From Vitrella brassicaformis CCMP3155 (Eukaryota > Protista > Chromerida), in assembly GCA_001179505.1 (NCBI GenBank), contig CDMY01000144.1:117451-181450 (forward strand): a stretch of 64,000 nt of DNA, given 5' to 3'. The position numbers were made by a program, and so were the translations under genes. This document shows positions 29,778 to 40,114 of the stretch, piece after piece; position 1 is the first letter of the stretch; the number at the start of each line of letters is the position of its first letter. The notes below the pieces were generated by a model. The model was not told the DNA's origin. It worked only from the letters and a program-made list of their open reading frames with translations, and ran no database searches.

Positions 29778-29975
29778 CCACTCCCTTTTTTGAACGCCAT
29801 TCGTGCAAGCCCCCTTTCTCTCTGCTTCCCCCTCCTCACTGTTCCAACGAGAAAGGCCTTAGAAAATGGAGAAGAAGCACGAACAGCAGATCTCACAGCA
29901 GACCCCCATTCAGCAAACACAGAGGGCAAAAGGCGACCATTGCAAGAAGCGGGTGACATCTTGCGCAGAGATGAA

Positions 29976-32900
29976 ATGACGGACCCCATCCACACCTCAA
30001 GGCTCTTAAATTATTGGTCCTTTTTGGCTATCGGCGCTGCTCATCTCCTGTACCCCCTACTCATCTGGCTGTTGTGGAAGCTTCCCCTTGAGCAATACAC
30101 CGATTCGGACGTCTTTCCCGCCTACACTTCAACATTGCGCGCTGGAGTCAGTATTTGCTCAATCACAGGTCGGTCAATTGAGCACGAAGGATGTATGTCA
30201 TTGGGTTGTATTGCGTCTGCTCCTCTTATGAAGGTGCCGTGACGCTTCTTGCTGTTGCGTTCTCATCTGTTGCTGTGCTCGGCTTGCCGACAAGAGAGTC
30301 ACATCGTCAGGTCCAGCAGACTCCGGTCATCATCATTGTCGGCCTTATTGCCGCATACGCCTGTCGTCTCTCGGGTCTTGTCCCCGTCTTCCGAGAGCCG
30401 CTGTTTGGCCGGCCGGTTGATCCCACCAAGATCTTCGATTGGCTGTTGGACTGCCCACTCCTCTTTCTCCAGATTGGCGGGTGTCTCTTTGAGCTGCCTT
30501 TCTGGGAGGTGGCTCTTCCTGCATGTCTCACTGCGGCCTACTGTGCACTCGCGATCGGGGTGCAGTTCTCGCCGACTCTTCCCCTGCGCGTTGTTGGCCT
30601 GGCTGTCATTTCCGTCGCGGTAGTGGTTACAAACGTGTTGCAGCACCGATGGAACACCAAAAAACACCAGGCTCTACTCCAGAGGATCTCTCAAATGCGC
30701 AACGACCCCGTGACCAGCCCGTTCAGCGGTCTGCTCGAGGGTTCCATCAGCAAGGGAAGCGCGGAGACACACAGGCGACTGGCAGAGGACTCGACCGATG
30801 ACAGCGTAATGCAGTCGCTGAAGGTATGAAAGCTGCTTGTCTGTGCAGCGGGCTGGTACTAGTAATGGCTGCTTGCAGAATACAGGGGCGTGCAGAAAAG
30901 TGCAGCAGCTGCAGAACGAACTGAAAGAGGAGCACATCATGCGAGACTTTCATATCTTCTTTTGGCAAAGCTCAACCAATTGGACCTTCCTCATCAGCAA
31001 GCTTGTCTTCGGCCTGCCATTCTGTAGGAATGAGAGTGGGAAGTTGAGGGGTTTGTGTGTCCTTGTATGTGTCTGCTGTCAGTGCTGTCTATCTTCAATC
31101 GCCTTCCTCCACACTTGGAAATAGCCATCTACGCCTTCCTCGAGCTCGCCAGCAAGGCGTAAGGGAGCGCTGCTTGTATAGTGTCGATAGCTGTTTGTCA
31201 TGCTGGCAGCCAAGGTCTCGCTTCTCTCCCTTTGTAGGCTGCTTTCCATCTTTTCAATGAGTATCATACTTTTGGAAAAAGAGAGAGACATACACGAAAG
31301 GGTAATTATTCGAAGACACGAAAGAGCGAGGGAGCGGTATGACTTTCCATCCTTTGTACGCAGAAAATAATCCGCCTCCGAGTAATCCCAGGTCTGTCAT
31401 TCAAGGAAAGAGTTCTGGGGGGTGCAACTGAGTTGTTTTGCTTCCTCTCTCTCAGTTGAGCTTAAGAACGATACCCTCCACTGGATCATCCAGGCACTCA
31501 AACGGGCGGACGAATCGAAGAGGAGATTTATGCGCTACATCTTTCATGAGATTCGAGTGCCCATGCACAGCCTCACTGTTTGTATGGAGCTACTAGATGA
31601 GAAGCTCAACCACAAGGAGAAGCTGCTTCAAAACATGATTTGGTCAGCAGGAAATCGCAGGCGTGTCATTACATGGCGAGACTGTATTTTGATTGCTCAC
31701 ATTTGCGCAGGTCGGTTGAGCTGATGCGCGAGACGCTGAATGGTGAGACCAGCAAAAATTCACGGAAGTCACTTGCGACCCTCTGCCTGCTGCTGTATCG
31801 CTGTTTAGATGTGTTGCTCGTCCACCAAATGGAAGAGAGGGGGACGCTTCCCCTCACAAAAAGGTTCTTCCGACTTGATGACTTCCTCGCGCAAACAGTG
31901 GCGCGCTTCCAGGTATCGCACGCGAATGCAGTCAATCCCATAATGAATCGATGGAAGATTATGCTGTGCTCAGGGCGGTGCACGTCGAAAGAACCAGCGG
32001 CTGTCCATTGAAGGGTCTGTACCTGCTGTTCTTGTATATGCAGATGACCGCCGTTTAAGCCAAGCACTCGGTTGGCATATTCCCTGCATGCCTCCCTGCA
32101 AATGGTCTGAAGTGATGGCAGGTTTTCTTGTTAATTGTAGGCAATGGCATATCCAACAGCATCAAAGCCACTCCAACAGATGGCGAGATTATTGTCCGAG
32201 TGTCATCCACCGACTTCCCTCCTGGTGTCAGCAAGGCACGAGTGGAAAGAGATTACCCTGACCTAGCCTTGACGACCTTCACCTTTCAAGTATGAACGAG
32301 GACGAGACATGCAGAAGCTGCGCTGACGCCCCCTTTTCGTCCCGCAGATCACAGACAACGGTGTGGGCCTGTCAAAGGAGCAGCTGGATCGTCTGAATAG
32401 CTTCAACCCCTTCCAGACAGAAATGGACGCGAATGCCACTCTCGAGGAGGACAGCAGCGGCCTTGGCCTTGCCATTACCAACGAGGTGTGTCGGCGGCAT
32501 CATGGATCATGCCATCTTTCGTCGCCCGGGAAAGGCAAAGGCACGACGTTCACCATCGAGACTCCATTGGAGAGTATTTTGGCGAGCGATGTCGAGAGAC
32601 TCTCCGCCCGTCTGCGCAAGTCAATCGAGGACAACACCGCTCAAATGGTAAAACTTAGAGAGAGGACAGATATCAAAGCGGGCCAAAGCTATCAGGCAAG
32701 ACCGTCGACAGATATAAGTCCGGCGTCGAGGCTTCGATTCAGTCTCGTGGATGAAAACGAAGTGAGTCGACAAGGTCTCTCACTGAGAACGAGTGGGCAT
32801 CTTTTGTCCTCCCCTTCTTCCCCCGCTGTGTGTCTATGATCGTTGCAGGATTATGAATTCTTTATTGGCCACGGATCTGCCGCTGCCTCTCCCTGTTTAG

Positions 32901-35900
32901 CCAAGAGAAAAACGGGTCAAGGGACGGGAGCAAGGAACAGATCTCGTCCGCCAGCCAGCAGGCAGTCGGAATCGGGCGAGCAAATAGAGCCAATTTCCAT
33001 TGACAAATCGGCGACGGCTGTAGCGGCCAATTTGCCGCTGCAGAAAGATGCGAAGATCCGCTGTCTATGTGTTGACGACGGTAAACGACGGTTACACACT
33101 TTCAACGAGACTGAAGGACGTTTGCGCTTTTCCACGTTCAGACGAACACTGCCTTGAAGCGACGTGTGAGAAAGAGAGGGCTTGATGCCCATTGATAAAC
33201 GTCACCATGAATGCATGTCTCTGTATTCCTCCCTGACAGGTTTGCTGCTCAATTATGCTGTGCCGAGGATACAATTGACAGAGCCAACAATGGTCGCGAG
33301 GCGGTCGAGCTAGTGAAGCAAAAAGCATATGATGTCGTCTTGATGGACGTGTGCATGCCGATTATGAATGGGACTGGTAAAGAAGCACAAACGAGATACC
33401 CACCCGCATGAACACGTGGCTGAAAATGATGCAGAAGCGACCGAGAAGCTGAGGGCTCTTAGGTTTGCCGGCCGAGTAATCGGGCTTCCGGCTAACGTCA
33501 TCAGCGAGGACCGACAGAAGATGGTGCAGGCAGGTGCGAATGAGGTGATCGCAAAGGGGAGTCTCAGCAAAGAGTTTGTGCGCGAGAGATTCACGACATA
33601 CTTCCCGGATACACTCGCTACATGCCAGCGGGCACGCACAGGAAGCCTACTATCTACTCCAGCTCTACTGCCCACGCACACGGAAGAAGCGCCCCCAGAA
33701 GAAATATCCGCTCTGCCTCGTCTACCTGTGAAGAGGAGCACGAAGACGTCCTCCCAAATGCGACGACATGCATCGATAAAGACCGCCCTGCACCACACGG
33801 ACAGGAGGAGTCACCGAGAGGCACAGAGAGAAGAGGAGCAGACGGTGCTTGTTGTCGACGATGACGAGACATGCCGCCAAGCCACAAGTCTGTTGCTGCA
33901 GTACTGCGGTCGTCGCTACAGGTTGCATGTCATCGAGGCTGCAGACGGCTTGGAGGGGCTGGAGATCGTCAAGAAGTCCCCACAGAAGCCTGATCTTATC
34001 TTTATGGATCTCTTGATGCCTCGAATGGACGGGCTAGAAGCCACCAAGGCCATTAGGGAGTCTGGCCATGCGGGCGCCATTCTTGGCTTGAGCGCCAAGT
34101 GAGCGATAGACGTGCACAGACCTACACACATTGATTGTCTTGTCTATTATCTATGTGTTTGTCCCTTTGCATGCATCAGTTTGTTGGAGGAAGATGTCGA
34201 ACATCTGCTGAACGCTGGTGTTTCGGCCGTCATCGCCAAAGGCCAACGTACACTCACTCACACAACCAACACAGCCGGCTGCATACCCTTTCTTGACCGG
34301 TAATCTGTCTGTCTGTCTACTTCCCATTCAGTTACAAAACAAGTCATGACGGAGCTCCTGGACAAACATTTGAGTACCACCGCCGTACAGCCCTCTCAGC
34401 CGATGTCCAGCGAAAGCACGTCGCCAAGAACCAGCAAGGAGAAGGGCTCGCGTGCCTTGCTGCAAACGCTGCCGGAGACATCGGTTGACGAGGCTGCGTT
34501 GTCATGCACTACGTCGCGCAAGAAGCTTCTTCAGGCAGCCATGGTGTCCACCAACAAGGACGAACGAGGCTTTTCGCCCTCGTGCCCTCACTCCCCGCGA
34601 TCCAATATTGAGCACCTGGCCACGCAAGAAAGGAAGGAGACGGTCTCAAAAGAAGAGGCGGCCGTTTTGAGTGTTCAAGCCGATGCGTCGATCAGCTCCC
34701 AGGAAGCGAGTGACGAAACGTCGATACGCAGCCAGAAAGGAGCGATGCCAGATGAGGAAACCTTGGACGACATTCACCACCAAATGACAGAGACAGACGT
34801 CAATCGCGACGTGTTCTTCGACCTCAAGCCTGTTTTTGTCCAGAAGATCATAGAGAGCGTCCACGCTCACAATCTGCGGAGCATGAGCCACCTATGGTAG
34901 GGTGTTGCGCTACATGCTGTATGTTATTGTGCTGTCCTTCTTGTGCAGGTGCTCGTCCAAACAGGAGATGATTACAAAATGGTGCCGCAAATGTGGTACG
35001 ATGGCCGCCTCTTCAGCGACAGCCAAAGGCTGAACCCTTCAAGGACCTCTCCTGCAGACACCCTCAGTGATGGAGCTGTGTGGACACACCACAGGTTGGA
35101 GTTTCTGAAGCTCTCTTGATCAGCCTTTTTTTCGATTTCTGTTCATTGTGGTCACACAGGTTGTTGGAGAGTCTTTGCGCACGTTTCCGTGTTGTCAAGA
35201 CGCGTGACGTGACGGAGACGATGGAGCACCTTCTGACAAACTTCTTGCCCGATTTGCTGGTCATTCTTTGCACGGTGCAGCCTCGAGGGCTTCCCGTTGG
35301 CTATGAGGCTCTGGCGTATCAGGCTAGGGAATACGACGACACCATCAAGACAGTCACTAAGGTGAGAGTTGGTGCCCGTTGCTCATCCATTCAAGTCTGT
35401 GTGTATGCAGATTCGGAAGTTTCTCCCACTGGACTTCTTCAGTCTTGTCGTCATATCCTCTGTCAGCTTAGCGGACGATGGAGAGCCTGCAACCAACGAG
35501 AGCAGTGGCACTTCTCTTCGTGGGGGCAGCGGCAGGCTGAATCTCGGAAGGATCTTTCAGTGCGGCGTCTCTGCCCACACTGCCATCGGTTCCCTCCCAT
35601 ATGGAGAGCAGGACGACTATGTACGTATCACATAGCAGAACAGACGCGTCTCTCGCATTTATCTGCTTTGTTTGCACTCAGATGGTAGTGTATGAGCAGC
35701 TGATGAGCCTGGTGCATCAGCAGAGGGCTCGCAATCGTCGGCTGGTGGCTGCCAATGCGCAAACCCAGGAGGCGCAAAATCTGCTGGCGAAGATACTGCC
35801 AATGGACATCATTCAGAGAATGCACGACGGAGAGCAGCTCATTGCGGACGCTCATCCAAGTGTCACAATCTTCTTCAGTGACATAGTTGGGTTTACTTCG

Positions 35901-38109
35901 ATTACAAGCCAGGCAAGACGGGCACAGAGCCACTAGATGCGGCACGAGCAAGGCGAGGATAATAACCTACGTGGACCAATGCCATCAGGTCCCAACAGCC
36001 TCGATGGTGTTGTTTCTCAACAAGGTACGAAGCCGTCCTCATTGATCATCTTCCTCTCCTTTGCTGGTTGCCTCTCCCCGCGTTTACACGTGCAGCTCTT
36101 TGGCAAGATGGACTCGCTCTCGGACAAATATGGCTGCTACAAGGTCGAAACGATAGGAGACGCCTACATGTGCGCCAGCGGACACGACGGGAAGGCTGAT
36201 CACGTCATATGCATGCTGAAGTTTGCAATCGCTGTGCAGCAGGAGGCTTCCAAGTGAGCAATCTCTGGCGCGGACCAGTGTACGAGACGAGGTGTCTTTG
36301 GACATGCTTGCTTTGCTGCTGTCGTGTCAGGATGAAACTTCCAAACGGAGAGCCTCTGAGGTTCTCCATTCCGAAGAGGGCTCATTCACACCGCCAAACT
36401 CTTCCAACTTTCGTGTCAGGATGCGAGTGGGGCTTCATACGGGCCCGGCTTTCACGGGTGTCGTCGGGCGCAAGTGTCCTCGCTTCTGTTTCTTTGGCGA
36501 CACCGTGAACACGGCAGCGCGGATGGAGCAGACGGGGATGCCACAAGTGAGAGCCGAAGGTTCATCAAGTGGATGGGGAGAGGTCACTTCTCATCTCGTC
36601 GTGTTATCTTTGTGCAGTGTATCCATATCAGCGCTCGCCTTCGTAACGGTCTAAGAGACATACATGACAAGCGCCCACAGACCGTGAAGGCAGCGCCACC
36701 CGACAAGACGCGTCAGAGAAGAGCGAGCGTCGACAGCGACAATCCTTCAGACGGATCCTTGCAAGTGACGTCGCCGGCAGCCAACAGGTCGTCACCAGGT
36801 GAAGACGCTATGCAGAGTGAGACACTGCACTAATTCAGCGCGGGAGGATCAGAGTCAAGGGGAAACCAGCAATGTGGACATACTTTGTCAATTATAAGGG
36901 CTGTCCGCAGAATCTGGCCGAGATGTGCAGAGAAGCTCGTGATGGAGGGGATCTCCACACGCCAACTTTCTATGGAACGCCGACACCAGAAAAGAGTGAT
37001 CGCGCGGTAAGCGGGATAGTCACACTGATGTACAGAGACATGCAACTAAGGCTCACTGCCTGCCTCACTTGTGTATGCATGGCTATCAATCCTAAGCCCT
37101 CACCCATCCCATCCCTGATCCTTGAGGGCCCGCGGACCAAGTCGATGGCTGAGCCCTGTGTCAACGTGCTTCCACCGGCATCCAGCCCCCCAGTGATCCC
37201 CCAGCCCAGCCCAGCGCCAACAACCGCGGAGGGAAATGCTCCTATTGCACTGGACAAAACAAAGTCCCTCGACATCCCTCAGGACGTCCTTTTGGAGAGG
37301 AGGGCTCAACCCCCCGCTGAGGCGGGGTCCCGAGAAGAGCAAGATGACAAAGACAAGACTCGGGAGACGCTTGATGAGAGGCACGCAGCCGACCTGCCAG
37401 CGGAAGACAAGCCGGAGACCGACAAGGCGCTTGACGGCTTGGCAGCTTCCTTTTCCAGACCACCCCTCTCCAGCGCAGCGTCCTCCTCAGACCAGCTCTC
37501 CCGAGAGCGAACAGGATCGATACTCAACTACAGCGAGCGCGCAGTGCTTCATCAGTCCTTCATATCAGCCTCTACCAGCAGCACTCTCCACCTGGCGCAA
37601 CCTGGGAAGCGACACCCTCCATTTGGCATCTCGCGTCTGCTGCATCTGTTTGGGGGAGACGAGAAGGGTGGCAACAGCGTCTTCTGTGGGCTTGCTGAGG
37701 GGGAGCTTCTACGGGTGTTGAAGGGGCTGTCGGATGAGACACTGTTGAAAGGGGTTGTCCTTCTGGCCAAGGCGCAGCAGCAGGCAGATGCGCTTATGAT
37801 CGAGCAACTCTCGCAAAAGGTGAGCAAGGGCGAACACATGCAAAGAGAAGGAGACATGATTTGCCGCATCTTTGTGTCTCCATGCAGCTCAAGGCAGCTC
37901 ACGACCGCGTCGATGCGCTGGAGGCGAGCGACATTGACCTCCGCCGGACCATCGCCTCGCTTCAGATCCTCACTCAGCTATGCCGCGCTCAGCTGCAGGC
38001 CGCTGCATTAGCTTCGTCGGCGAGTGGTGTCTCCTCTTCTGAGGACCAGGACGAGGCAGCCAAGGGCGGCTTCAATGAGCTGGAGCACCCCACATGGCTC
38101 ACTTTCTGA
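29976..38109 (+). CDS. Histidine kinase rhodopsin-guanylyl cyclase (2c-Cyclop-like enzymerhodopsin): TM0 + 7TM rhodopsin - HisKA - HATPase - REC - REC - pseudo-REC - GC - coiled tail
   Basis: Helix [24 protein letters not shown]; helix [22 protein letters not shown]; H-box [13 protein letters not shown]; N/G1/G2 boxes NSIK, ITDNGVG, SGLGLAI; receivers [14 protein letters not shown] and [14 protein letters not shown]; cyclase [53 protein letters not shown]. Confidence 0.9.
30003..31262 (+). other. Type-1 (microbial) rhodopsin domain with extra N-terminal TM0
   Basis: Spliced exons give 8 hydrophobic segments. Helix C aligns to bacteriorhodopsin RYADWLFTTPLLLLD; helix G aligns to VPLNIETLLFMVLDVSAKVGF. 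Schiff-base Lys codon AAG at 31154-31156. Confidence 0.85.
31457..32575 (+). other. Histidine kinase core (HisKA + HATPase_c)
   Basis: Phospho-His codon CAT at 31545-31547 in FHEIRVP; N box [10 protein letters not shown]; G1 DNGVG; G2 SGLGLAIT; terminal [11 protein letters not shown]. Confidence 0.92.
33050..35360 (+). other. Receiver array: REC1, REC2 and a degenerate third receiver-like segment
   Basis: REC1: CVDD / MDVCMP / IGLPAN / VIAKG. REC2: VVDD / MDLLMP / LGLSAN / VIAKG. Third: [30 protein letters not shown], with no phospho-Asp. Confidence 0.8.
35780..36895 (+). other. Class III nucleotide cyclase with guanylyl-cyclase specificity residues
   Basis: Both metal-binding Asp present (FSDIV, IGDAY); Glu in KVETIG and Cys in RFCFFG (GTP-selecting); catalytic N and R in NTAAR. 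Confidence 0.92.
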
Positions 38110-38779: not shown

Positions 38780-40114
38780 TCACTCGCCCGCCCCAAACCC
38801 CACCTCTACAAGTGCCTTCTCCTCTTCGCCCCCATCCACAGCAGCAGCAGCAGCAGCAGCAGCGACGGCACTGTCTTCCGTCTTGTTGCTGCTGCCTCTC
38901 TTGCGGCTCTTCTTCTTCTTGATAGACACACCGCCCGCATAGTTGGATGAAGGGGTAGGGGCGGCACCGCTCCCCGCTGCTGCTGTGCCGCTGCTGGCTG
39001 GCTGCGGCTGGGATGCAGCCGTGCTGTCAGCAGTGGACTGGGAGAGGCCGTAACAGAAAGGGGCGGGGGCGATAGGCGGCATCAGTCTGGTCGAGAAGTT
39101 GGCCCGCAGCCCCTCCAAGAGATAGTCGCGATGGATGGGGTGGCCCCGATGCTGCTCGAATGTGGACAGGGCGTTGTCGAGGGTCATGTTGCATCGCAGG
39201 CACAGGTAAGAGACGACGAAGTAGCCGGTCCGGTTGACCCCATGTGTGCAGTGGATGGCGATGACGCACGGGGAGGGGCTGTTGCTGGCCGTCCAATCCC
39301 GGCGGATGCTGTCGACCATCACACAGAACGCCTCTGTGTCCCCTCGGCTGGGGGTCTCCCTGCCCTTGACGGCCATCTTGTGATGCTTCACACCACTGTC
39401 CTCGAACGTACATGCATCATAATATCTGCACCGCCACACGCAGACACGAAAATGGGGGATGTCCTTATCGCCCTGTGGACATCTTCCTTCTTACCTCTTG
39501 GTGTCGCAGAGGTCGATGATGGCCGAGAGAGGCGCGACAGAGGAAGCCATGTGTTTTATGAGGTCCGCGGGATAGAATCGGTCGTCGTAAGCAGGAATAG
39601 CCTGGTCGAAGGTCTTCTTGAGTGGCACCTTGTGCGGCACCATGAAGGCACCATCACGCCCTTCCCCTTGCATCCGCAGCAGCCTGATGGGTGTGCCCAC
39701 CTTGGTGTACCGCAGCCAGCCAGTTATCATGCTCTCGCCTGCACAGAGGGCATTCAACGCACAGCAAGGCAAGCAGTGGGACACGCGTGACGCTCTGATG
39801 TAAGTGCCGACCCGACACTTGCCTCTATCTCCGTGGGTGTGCGAAGGCCTTCCTCTTCCTCTTCCTCTTCCACCGCGCCCCCTCCCTCCCTCCCAGCCTC
39901 TCCACCCACCCCGTCCCCTGTCGTGTGCGTCACGATGGTCCTGACGCTGATAGGGATCACGCGAGAAGAAGGCCATCCGGTCATACAAATCACCGGAGTG
40001 TGAGCCTGGGTGAGGTGCGTAGGGATCAGGTGGATATTGGGGAGGATAATGCGGAGGATAATGATAAGGTGGTGGCTGCTGATGGCCTTGCCATGGCGCG
40101 CCGTCCTCAGTCAT
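38780..40114 (-). CDS. Stand-alone cysteine-type RNA 5'-triphosphatase (DUSP11/PIR-1-like) with N-terminal Pro/Tyr and RGG region
   Basis: FMVPHKVPL; IIDLCDTKRYY; IAIHCTHGVNRTGYFVVSYL; FEQHRGHPI. RGG box GRGGWRGWEGGRGRGGRGRGRG. No guanylyltransferase domain follows. Confidence 0.85.

What the first reader, a model, noticed from the sequence alone, without database searches (positions are those of the whole stretch)
29976..38109. Single-chain light-to-cGMP pathway: rhodopsin-histidine kinase-receivers-guanylyl cyclase in an alveolate-type genome
Seen: splicing the + strand exons joins an 8-TM rhodopsin (helix [16 protein letters not shown]; helix [10 protein letters not shown] with retinal Lys at 31154-31156, hidden from the ORF track because it sits in a ~75-bp exon) to [12 protein letters not shown] HisKA, a full HATPase, two Asp-bearing receivers and a GC with all catalytic residues. 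Known: this architecture matches the two-component cyclase opsins (2c-Cyclop/HKR) characterised in volvocine green algae, which are ATP-dependent, light-inhibited guanylyl cyclases. Inference: a chromerid-type (apicomplexan-relative) genome encodes such an enzymerhodopsin, which could link light to PKG signalling (e.g. zoospore release or motility) and offer a new optogenetic tool. An automated annotation could easily miss the rhodopsin part.
Basis: partly seen in the sequence, partly recalled or inferred. Interest (0 to 1): 0.93.

Follow-up and report, generated by a model that had tools for sequence, protein, structure and literature searches.

The report
Hidden light sensor on algal cGMP enzyme
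In the alga Vitrella brassicaformis, a close relative of malaria-type parasites, a gene listed publicly as a plain histidine kinase really starts with a light-sensor (rhodopsin) domain that the annotation cut off, making it a candidate light-controlled cGMP-producing enzyme of a kind so far characterised only in green algae.

Summary
The window is Vitrella brassicaformis CCMP3155. One 31-exon gene on the + strand (ATG 29976 to TGA 38109, conceptual 2033 aa) encodes an 8-TM microbial rhodopsin, then HisKA, HATPase, two receivers and a guanylate-type class III cyclase. The Schiff-base Lys is K334 (31154-31156).

One spliced RNA contig joins all rhodopsin exons to the kinase, both receivers and the first cyclase exon through 21 GT..AG junctions.

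The public model (CEL93190.1, "histidine kinase") starts inside the E-F loop and lacks helices 0-E. A 2018 survey most likely described this protein (VbrasHK1) without a rhodopsin.

Corrections:
- Two micro-exons lie between 31158 and 31456.
- The rhodopsin is closest to bestrhodopsin (E 2e-11), not to the one HKR-type protein tested.
- Chromera has an ortholog with a decayed enzyme half.

Caveat: the assembled RNA isoform is not productive. A 24-nt micro-exon (22 nt would be in frame) and one retained intron stop its ORF at 802 aa (rhodopsin plus kinase).

Retinal binding and light control of cGMP are untested. Verdict: a new variant of the two-component cyclase opsin design in an alveolate.

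The parts
29800..29975 (+). 5' UTR, at least 176 nt, with two small upstream ORFs (ATG 29866, 37 codons; ATG 29971, 2 codons)
   Evidence: The X5 RNA contig starts at or before 29800. The uORFs were found. 29976 is the first in-frame ATG.
29976..30168 (+). Exon 1: start codon, extra N-terminal helix TM0 (residues 14-36) and the beginning of helix A
   Evidence: RNA junction 30168|30234. Hydropathy. It aligns with the N-terminus of Chromera Cvel_6411.
30234..30823 (+). Exon 2: rhodopsin helices A-E and most of the ~90-aa E-F loop. Helix C carries K130, D133, W134 and D137 (30428-30451). The public model's start Met (M219) lies at 30695.
   Evidence: Pfam Bac_rhodopsin E 0.016. PDB 7pl9 E 0.004 with the single sequence and 2e-11 with the family profile. 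In the Atlas, 98 of the 100 nearest clusters are Bac_rhodopsin. RNA junctions.
30879..31023 (+). Exon 3: end of the E-F loop and helix F ([25 protein letters not shown])
   Evidence: RNA junctions 30823|30879 and 31023|31083. In frame. Aligns to helix F of Cvel_6411.
31083..31158 (+). Exon 4 (76 nt): first half of helix G, with E330 (31142-31144) and the Schiff-base Lys K334 (31154-31156)
   Evidence: RNA junctions 31023|31083 and 31158|31238. This Lys aligns with the Lys in DVITK of Cvel_6411.
31238..31391 (+). Exons 5 (31238-31301, rest of helix G: [12 protein letters not shown]) and 6 (31364-31391, linker).
   Evidence: RNA junctions 31158|31238, 31301|31364 and 31391|31456. The frame is kept.
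31456..32761 (+). Exons 7-12: histidine kinase. The DHp carries H396 (31545-31547). The ATPase domain has its N, G1, F and G2 boxes (residues 506-597).
   Evidence: Pfam HisKA and HATPase_c. Motif positions. Six RNA junctions.
33053..33604 (+). Receiver 1, spanning the end of exon 13, micro-exon 14, exon 15 and the start of exon 16. It has D769/D770, acceptor D814 (33346-33348) and K864. The switch Thr/Ser position is a Pro.
   Evidence: Pfam Response_reg. Test against a local REC HMM.
33142..33165 (+). Micro-exon 14 with tandem donors GT|GT at 33164 and 33166. The RNA contig holds the 24-nt form, which shifts the frame by +2 and stops the ORF at 802 aa. The 22-nt form (33142-33163) gives a complete receiver 1.
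   Evidence: Junctions and record lengths. Frame analysis. The bin depth of 18.0 fits 105 exonic nt. The 22-nt variant aligns to REC HMM positions 2-110 (73.2 bits), whereas the public model aligns only from position 24 (69.8 bits).
33842..34247 (+). Receiver 2, fully canonical: D965-D967, acceptor D1015 (34007-34009), S1043 and K1065
   Evidence: Pfam Response_reg E 2e-19. Local HMM score 92.5 bits. RNA junctions 34098|34180 and 34247|34332; the second is also seen in a second run, X1.
34993..35057 (+). Intron 19 (65 nt, GT..AG). It is spliced out in the public model but retained in the X5 RNA contig, which shifts the frame.
   Evidence: The record arithmetic (347 nt between pieces) and the bin depths 25.3 and 23.1 fit retention only. 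P0001 removes it.
35682..37006 (+). Exons 23-29: coiled-coil lead-in and class III cyclase domain, with D1487, E1527, D1531, R1572, C1595, N1602 and R1606. Includes a GC..AG intron (35913-35988), a 36-nt exon (35989-36024), a 30-nt exon (36331-36360) and exon 29 (36839-37006: [19 protein letters not shown]), which the public model largely skips.
   Evidence: Pfam Guanylate_cyc E 8e-49. PDB matches to AC5, Chlamydomonas CYG12 (3et6, 1.5e-40), ANP receptor and RhGC. Exon 23 is in the RNA contig. Run X5 holds all sampled words of exon 25. Exon 29 is my inference from the reading frame, the splice sites and the motif; it was not confirmed.
37097..38109 (+). Exons 30-31: C-terminal extension of about 315 aa with no recognised domain. 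Stop codon TGA at 38107-38109.
   Evidence: Mapped from the public model P0001. No Pfam hit.

Best explanation
This is one nuclear gene of Vitrella brassicaformis. Its full reading frame encodes a membrane photoreceptor-enzyme in this order: an 8-helix microbial rhodopsin with cytosolic N- and C-termini (Schiff-base Lys K334), a histidine kinase joined directly behind helix G, two receiver domains, and a homodimer-type guanylyl cyclase.

Proposed mechanism:
1. Retinal isomerisation in the rhodopsin changes the packing of the DHp helices that continue from helix G.
2. This alters autophosphorylation of H396.
3. The phosphoryl group passes to a receiver. D1015 of the canonical second receiver is the likelier acceptor. 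The first receiver (D814) lacks the switch Thr/Ser and may act as a sink or modulator.
4. The phosphorylation state of the receiver sets the activity of the cyclase dimer, which makes cGMP from GTP (specificity pair E1527/C1595).

The sign of the light response is unknown. By analogy with 2c-Cyclop it would be active in the dark and inhibited by light.

Shown: the gene structure; transcript continuity from the rhodopsin to the first cyclase exon; the presence of all domains and catalytic residues; a conserved rhodopsin-to-kinase junction in the sister chromerid.

Inferred: retinal binding, light control, the phosphorelay route, cGMP output, and production of the full-length protein from a productively spliced isoform.
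For: Transcript:
- One spliced contig in run X5 (4736 nt) links exons 1-23 through GT..AG joints. My reconstruction gives 4734 nt plus the ends.
- A second run, X1, holds exon 1-2 sequence and the junction 34247|34332.
- The ORF is open from the ATG through 13 junctions. With canonical sites it runs for 2033 aa without a stop.

Domains:
- Pfam on the public model gives HisKA, HATPase_c, two Response_reg and Guanylate_cyc.
- The catalytic residues were located.

Rhodopsin identity:
- The family profile of helices A-E hits bestrhodopsin 7pl9 at E 2e-11, followed by 44 further entries, nearly all other microbial rhodopsins.
- In the Atlas, 98 of the 100 nearest clusters are Bac_rhodopsin.
- The Chromera ortholog Cvel_6411 passes the Pfam Bac_rhodopsin cutoff at 28 bits.
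- That ortholog aligns with the Vitrella protein from TM0 to the H-box, with Lys on Lys.
- Hydropathy shows eight hydrophobic helices.

Precedent: 2c-Cyclop has the same order of domains and is a light-inhibited, ATP-dependent guanylyl cyclase (PMC6284317).
Against: - The only assembled RNA isoform is non-productive. It carries the 24-nt micro-exon 14 and retains intron 19, so its ORF ends at 802 aa.
- Helices F-G find nothing in the PDB by sequence, either singly or as a profile.
- On my pairwise alignment the usual helix-F residues (W182/Y185/P186/W189 of bacteriorhodopsin) are not clearly kept.
- The conserved Arg of helix C is a Lys (K130).
- The E-F loop is about 90 aa long.
- The Vitrella piece alone is below the Pfam cutoff.
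- The AF2 model of the Chromera domain was unusable (pLDDT 47).
- The Chromera ortholog has lost the H-box His and has no significant REC or cyclase match, so the enzymatic half is dispensable in at least one chromerid.
- The 3' cyclase exons (24-29) have no junction-level RNA support here.
Confidence: 0.62

Rival explanations
1. The N-terminal domain is an opsin-fold membrane anchor or sensor that no longer binds retinal. The protein would then be a two-component guanylyl cyclase regulated by something other than light.
For: Helices F-G have no detectable sequence match to any solved rhodopsin. The Pfam hit is below cutoff. The helix-C Arg is a Lys and helix F is divergent. Unchecked first-reader notes describe another rhodopsin-fold gene in this genome without the Lys.
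Against: The Lys sits four residues after a carboxylate in the middle of the last helix (E330-x-x-x-K334) and aligns with the Chromera Lys. W134 and the D133/D137 carboxylates of helix C are kept, as in bestrhodopsin.
Confidence: 0.2
2. The main product is a truncated rhodopsin-histidine kinase of about 800 aa, as encoded by the assembled RNA isoform. The receiver-cyclase part would then be translated rarely or never, either through regulated unproductive splicing or because the gene is starting to decay.
For: The X5 contig carries the 24-nt exon 14 and retains intron 19. Its ORF from the ATG stops after 802 aa, and the bin depths fit this form only. Contig assembly tends to keep the more abundant variant. 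The Chromera ortholog shows that the downstream enzymes can decay.
Against: Both frame breaks lie at splice sites and not inside exons. Each has a canonical in-frame alternative: a donor 2 nt upstream, and a 65-nt GT..AG intron. Downstream there are about 1230 codons with no stop, and every catalytic residue of receiver 2 and the cyclase is intact.
Confidence: 0.14
3. The rhodopsin and the kinase-cyclase are two neighbouring genes, and the fusion is an artefact of exon joining.
For: The public model starts at M219, inside the E-F loop.
Against: A single spliced contig crosses the whole region. M219 lies within an exon that the contig covers without a break, and helices F-G would be useless without A-E. 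Chromera has the same fusion in one model.
Confidence: 0.02

Closest known systems
Two-component cyclase opsins (Cr2c-Cyclop1 / Vc2c-Cyclop1, formerly COP6) of volvocine green algae (PMC6284317)
   Same: An 8-TM type-1 rhodopsin with the histidine kinase directly behind it, followed by a receiver, a guanylate-type class III cyclase and a long C-terminal tail of unknown function. The phospho-His, phospho-Asp and cyclase residues are all present.
   Different: This protein has two receivers instead of one. About 400 aa separate receiver 2 from the cyclase, whereas in 2c-Cyclop the cyclase follows the receiver directly. The kinase-to-receiver spacer is short (about 150 aa against about 500). The host is an alveolate. 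The rhodopsin shows no detectable similarity to the one HKR-type rhodopsin tested. No activity data exist.
Bestrhodopsin (rhodopsin-rhodopsin-bestrophin channel of Phaeocystis; PDB 7pl9)
   Same: It is the best solved-structure match to helices B-D (E 2e-11, both tandem domains). It shares the helix-C pattern [R/K]-x-x-[E/D]-W-x-x-D and the C-x-L-F-x-x-P-F motif after helix C. Bestrhodopsins absorb near 660 nm and are bistable (PMC10962995, PMC12291454).
   Different: There is no bestrophin domain here; the output is kinase, receivers and cyclase. There is one rhodopsin, not a tandem. Helices F-G are not alignable by sequence. The colour is unknown.
Histidine kinase rhodopsins (HKR1/COP5, Ot-HKR) and an unnamed Rh-HisKA-HATPase-REC protein (P0110)
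   Same: A rhodopsin fused to a hybrid histidine kinase with a receiver.
   Different: P0110 has no cyclase. The chromerid rhodopsin profile does not find P0110 even at E 100, and hhalign gives a probability of 10%. The kinase domain is no closer to P0110 (E 4e-12) than to many bacterial hybrid kinases (best 3e-24).
VbrasHK1 of Kabbara et al. 2018 (PMC6324907) = public model CEL93190.1 / A0A0G4EB57
   Same: Most likely the same gene. [quoted passage not shown] P0001 has exactly these Pfam domains.
   Different: The published and public model lacks the first 218 residues (TM0 to helix E), so it was classed as a kinase without a sensor. It also replaces micro-exon 14 with a GC-type donor and skips most of exon 29. 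I could not check the accession in the paper's supplement.
Chromera velia Cvel_6411 (A0A0G4HD49)
   Same: An ortholog with 33% identity over helices B-D. It aligns from TM0 through helix G (Lys kept) to the H-box region, so the rhodopsin-kinase fusion predates the split of the two chromerids.
   Different: The H-box His is an Asp (ILDEVRVP). Only a weak HATPase_c match remains (E 0.009), with no significant receiver or cyclase match.
Fungal rhodopsin-guanylyl cyclases (BeRhGC/Cyclop, NeoR)
   Same: An 8-TM rhodopsin controlling a guanylyl cyclase.
   Different: In those proteins the rhodopsin couples directly to the cyclase through a coiled coil, with no kinase or receivers. No NeoR entry appeared among the PDB profile hits.

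Membership tests
Microbial (type-1) rhodopsin | Seven-helix core with a Lys in the middle of the last helix, four residues after a carboxylate or polar position | tested here: met
   There are eight hydrophobic helices (TM0 plus A-G). E330-L-A-S-K334 lies in the last helix. This Lys aligns with the Lys of the Chromera ortholog.
Microbial (type-1) rhodopsin | Significant sequence or profile similarity to known rhodopsins | tested here: met
   The family profile A1 against the PDB gives 7pl9 at E 2e-11 and 44 further entries, nearly all microbial rhodopsins. Cvel_6411 passes the Pfam cutoff (28 against 24.6 bits). The Vitrella exon alone is below the cutoff (15.1 bits).
Microbial (type-1) rhodopsin | Conserved retinal-pocket residues (Trp of helix C; the W-x-x-Y-P-x-x-W region of helix F) | tested here: inconclusive
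   The helix-C Trp (W134) is kept. Helix F ([22 protein letters not shown]) cannot be aligned to known rhodopsins by sequence. The AF2 model was too poor to use.
Microbial (type-1) rhodopsin | Covalent retinal binding and a photocycle | not testable with these tools
   This needs expression with all-trans retinal and spectroscopy.
HKR / two-component cyclase opsin (2c-Cyclop) | One polypeptide with the order rhodopsin (8 TM), HisKA, HATPase, receiver, guanylyl cyclase | tested here: met
   The conceptual ORF of 2033 aa has this order, with two receivers. One RNA contig spans from the rhodopsin to the first cyclase exon. Caveat: that isoform is out of frame after residue 779.
HKR / two-component cyclase opsin (2c-Cyclop) | Intact phosphorelay and cyclase residues (H-box His, ATP-lid boxes, receiver Asp, metal Asp pair, E/C specificity pair, Asn/Arg) | tested here: met
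   H396; N, G1, F and G2 boxes at 506-597; D814 and D1015; D1487, D1531, E1527, C1595, N1602 and R1606.
HKR / two-component cyclase opsin (2c-Cyclop) | The rhodopsin domain belongs to the HKR clade (common descent of the fusion) | tested here: not met
   The one HKR-type protein available (P0110) is not found by the chromerid profile, and hhalign gives a probability of 10%. Bestrhodopsin is far closer. Named Cop5/Cop6 sequences could not be fetched, so this test is narrow.
HKR / two-component cyclase opsin (2c-Cyclop) | ATP-dependent, light-inhibited cGMP synthesis | not testable with these tools
   This needs an enzyme assay in the dark and in light.
Bestrhodopsin | Rhodopsin domain(s) fused to a bestrophin channel | tested here: not met
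   No Bestrophin hit appears anywhere in the ORF. Only the rhodopsin module is similar.

The most novel reading that the evidence does not exclude
Chromerids built the rhodopsin, histidine kinase, receiver and guanylyl cyclase design independently of green algae, starting from a bestrhodopsin/NeoR-like rhodopsin with three carboxylates around the Schiff base (D133, D137, E330). The Vitrella protein would then be a red- or far-red-sensitive, possibly bistable, two-component guanylyl cyclase in the closest photosynthetic relatives of Apicomplexa, where cGMP-PKG signalling governs motility and egress. A tandem splice donor would switch output between a rhodopsin-kinase and the full cyclase.
Probability: 0.25. 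Interest if true: 0.85.

Novelty: new variant of a known kind. Interest (0 to 1): 0.66.

Why it matters
- It moves a published "sensor-less" eukaryotic histidine kinase-cyclase (VbrasHK1) into the enzymerhodopsins.
- It extends the two-component cyclase opsin design beyond green algae to an alveolate.
- The rhodopsin module comes from a different branch, nearest to bestrhodopsin. That raises the question of convergent fusion and the possibility of a red-shifted, phosphorelay-gated cGMP tool.
- It gives a concrete candidate for how a free-living relative of apicomplexan parasites could couple light to cGMP signalling.
- It shows that rhodopsin exons hidden in short-intron, micro-exon genes escape both automatic annotation and family-wide surveys. 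No public protein in a library clustered from about 15 billion public proteins covers helices A-E of this gene.

Tried and rejected
- My first hand model joined 31158 to an AG at 31432. It was in frame and gave a plausible helix G, but RNA showed two micro-exons instead.
- I first read three frame clashes as signs of a pseudogene. Two are resolved by short introns or micro-exons already present in the public model (34993-35057; 36331-36360 plus 36361-36419). The third is resolved by a donor 2 nt upstream.
- phmmer of exon 2 against 1.84 billion cluster representatives gave only 3 hits, so the family is tiny.
- The search for homologous proteins with the Chromera rhodopsin region and with the P0110 rhodopsin region each returned only the query. 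I therefore could not assemble an HKR or bestrhodopsin set for a tree.
- The kinase region found mostly bacterial hybrid kinases and was not informative on origin.
- The helix F-G sequence and its profile found nothing in the PDB.
- The AF2 model of Cvel_6411 residues 1-335 with a 4-row alignment reached pLDDT 47. I ran no fold search on it.
- MAFFT misplaced short exon fragments in alignment A3, which I discarded.
- The ENA fragment P0003 (locus L001) shows rhodopsin helices C-D only. No kinase or cyclase lies within 10 kb.
- Exon 29 alone gave no Pfam or PDB hit because it is too short.
- The supplement of PMC6324907 is not held, so the VbrasHK1 accession remains unchecked.

Full report
**What is there**

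The + strand between 29976 and 38109 carries short open frames separated by introns of 49-90 nt. Translated piece by piece, Pfam finds the following:
- HisKA at 31386-31721
- HATPase_c at 32116-32836
- Response_reg twice, within 33211-34099
- Guanylate_cyc in three pieces, within 35541-36651

The piece at 30182-30826 gives only a sub-threshold Bac_rhodopsin match (15.1 bits, E 0.016). Its best solved-structure match is the rhodopsin of bestrhodopsin 7pl9 (E 0.004, helices B-C).

**Identity of the genome and the public model**

A full HMMER scan of exon 2 against 1.84 billion cluster representatives returned three proteins.

P0001 matches at 100% identity, but only over the last 43 residues of the query. 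It is CEL93190.1 / A0A0G4EB57, 'histidine kinase', from Vitrella brassicaformis CCMP3155. This public model is 1773 aa long. It begins at MRNDPV..., which is residue 219 of the real ORF and lies inside the E-F loop. Its Pfam domains are HisKA, HATPase_c, two Response_reg and Guanylate_cyc, with no rhodopsin.

[quoted passage not shown] It calls the topology never before seen in eukaryotes and mentions no rhodopsin (PMC6324907). I could not check the accession because the supplement is not held. A catalogue of algal rhodopsins lists HKRs only from green algae and none from chromerids (PMC10865886). No paper in the library links Vitrella, opsin and guanylyl cyclase for this gene.

**Transcript evidence**

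Run X5 contains a single spliced contig of 4736 nt. It starts at or before 29800 and ends at about 35913. All listed joints are GT..AG.

From the joints and the record coordinates I rebuilt 22 exons, which sum to 4734 nt and so fit the record. The bin depths show exonic coverage only, so the run behaves as RNA. The contig includes:
- exon 1 (29976-30168)
- exon 2 (30234-30823)
- a helix-F exon (30879-31023)
- the 76-nt exon with the Lys (31083-31158)
- the kinase exons from 31456 onward

Reading from ATG 29976, the frame is open through all of these and through the kinase. A second run from another study (X1) holds exon 1-2 sequence and the junction 34247|34332. Run X5 also holds every sampled word of the core cyclase exon 36096-36253. 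Neither is met.

**The caveat: this isoform is not productive**

The contig has the following problems:
- It carries micro-exon 14 as 24 nt (33142-33165). That form cannot be in frame with receiver 1 and stops the ORF at 802 aa, which is the rhodopsin plus a complete kinase.
- A second GT lies 2 nt upstream (33164). The resulting 22-nt exon gives [16 protein letters not shown]... This aligns to a receiver HMM built from 184 receiver domains over positions 2-110 (73.2 bits). The public model replaces the micro-exon with a GC-type donor and aligns only from position 24 (69.8 bits).
- The contig also retains a 65-nt GT..AG intron (34993-35057) that the public model removes. The record arithmetic and the bin depths fit retention only.

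Both breaks sit at splice sites and each has a canonical in-frame alternative. With those alternatives, 31 exons give 2033 codons without a stop. I therefore read the gene as functional with noisy or regulated splicing. The full-length protein is still inferred.

**Is the N-terminus a rhodopsin?**

Evidence that it is:
- Hydropathy gives eight helices: 14-36, 53-85, 93-117, 131-153, 154-177, 176-203, 295-317 and 321-348.
- Helix C reads K130-I-F-D133-W134-L-L-D137-C-P.
- The last helix reads E330-L-A-S-K334 followed by [13 protein letters not shown].
- The second hit of the library scan, Chromera velia Cvel_6411 (1616 aa), passes the Pfam Bac_rhodopsin cutoff (28 bits).
- Cvel_6411 aligns with the Vitrella protein from TM0 through helix G, Lys on Lys, and on to the H-box region ([18 protein letters not shown] against NRFMREILDEVRVPMNSL). 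The rhodopsin-kinase fusion is therefore shared by both chromerids.
- A profile of helices A-E from the four family members hits bestrhodopsin at E 2e-11 (both tandem domains). It then hits xantho-, halo-, bacterio- and sensory rhodopsins, RhoPDE and sodium pumps, 45 entries in all and nearly all of them rhodopsins.
- The language-model atlas places 98 of the 100 nearest clusters in Bac_rhodopsin.

Evidence that leaves retinal binding open:
- Helices F-G match nothing in the PDB, either singly or as a profile.
- The AF2 model of the Chromera domain was too poor to use (pLDDT 47).

The fold and the Lys are well supported. An intact retinal pocket is not.

**Enzyme half**

- Kinase: H-box H396, and the N box (506-512), G1 (558-563), F (574-577) and G2 (592-597) are all present.
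- Receiver 1 has D769/D770, D814 and K864, but a Pro at the switch Thr/Ser position.
- Receiver 2 is canonical, with D965-967, D1015, S1043 and K1065.
- The cyclase aligns at E 1e-41 to 1e-34 with AC5, Chlamydomonas CYG12, the ANP receptor, soluble guanylyl cyclase and fungal RhGC.
- The cyclase keeps the metal-binding D1487 and D1531, the guanine pair E1527/C1595, R1572, N1602 and R1606. These are the residues expected of a homodimeric guanylyl cyclase.
- Exon 29 (36839-37006, [19 protein letters not shown]) looks like the last strands of the domain. The public model skips most of it. This is my inference from the frame, the splice sites and the motif, and it was not confirmed.

**Comparison with known systems**

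2c-Cyclops are 8-TM opsin, kinase, ~500-aa spacer, one receiver, cyclase and a long tail. They are ATP-dependent and inhibited by light through H352 and D1092 (PMC6284317). The Vitrella protein has the same logic, but it has two receivers and a long spacer before the cyclase.

Its rhodopsin does not resemble the one HKR-type protein I could obtain. P0110 (Rh-HisKA-HATPase-REC) is not found by the chromerid profile at E 100, and hhalign gives a probability of 10%. I could not fetch named Cop5/Cop6 or bestrhodopsin sequences for a tree, so independent origin is suggested, not shown.

The helix-C and helix-G carboxylates (D133, D137, E330) appear to correspond to the three counterion carboxylates reported for NeoR (E136, D140, E262; PMC12875766 abstract), though I made no alignment to NeoR. 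I confirmed the residues and the bestrhodopsin kinship, but not any spectral consequence.

The Chromera ortholog has Asp in place of the H-box His and has no significant receiver or cyclase match. Vitrella therefore keeps the catalytically complete version.

**Verdict**

It is open for retinal binding, for the sign of light control, for production of the full-length protein, and for kinship with green-algal HKRs. The scan's notes hold no earlier report of this architecture.

Noticed in passing
window 33142-33167: Tandem splice donors GT|GT lie 2 nt apart at the end of a 22/24-nt micro-exon. The RNA contig uses the downstream donor, which breaks the frame. This might be a splicing switch between a rhodopsin-kinase product and the full cyclase.
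   Followed up: partly
window 34993-35057: A 65-nt GT..AG intron is retained in the only assembled RNA contig, whereas the public gene model removes it.
   Followed up: partly
window 35913-35988: A GC..AG intron (donor CAG|GCAAGA) lies inside the cyclase domain. It is needed to join FTSITSQ to the 36-nt exon [12 protein letters not shown]. The RNA contig ends exactly at this donor.
   Followed up: partly
window 29866-29979: The 5' UTR holds two upstream ORFs. The second (ATG AAA TGA at 29971) overlaps the main start codon at 29976.
   Followed up: no
P0002 (Chromera velia Cvel_6411): The ortholog keeps the rhodopsin and its Lys. Its H-box His is an Asp, and it has lost recognisable receiver and cyclase domains. 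It may be a rhodopsin with a pseudo-kinase tail.
   Followed up: partly
L001:10001-10690 (ENA ERZ25070293, 2-Mb contig): Two protein fragments of 229 and 244 aa (P0003; P0004 from another contig) come from an unidentified eukaryotic assembly. They share the chromerid helix C-D motifs (W-L-I-x-x-P, C-x-L-x-x-P-x-x-E-V). No kinase or cyclase was detected within 10 kb downstream.
   Followed up: partly
window 38780-39439 (- strand): The neighbouring gene fragment encodes a dual-specificity phosphatase catalytic domain (HCTHGVNRTG; Pfam DSPc E 4e-9) followed by an Ala/Ser-rich tail.
   Followed up: partly
same genome, other windows (scan notes): First-reader notes list many further rhodopsin genes in Vitrella: stand-alone 8-TM forms, a PAS-fused form, and one lacking the Lys. 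All are unchecked. If real, Vitrella has a large and mostly unannotated rhodopsin repertoire.
   Followed up: no
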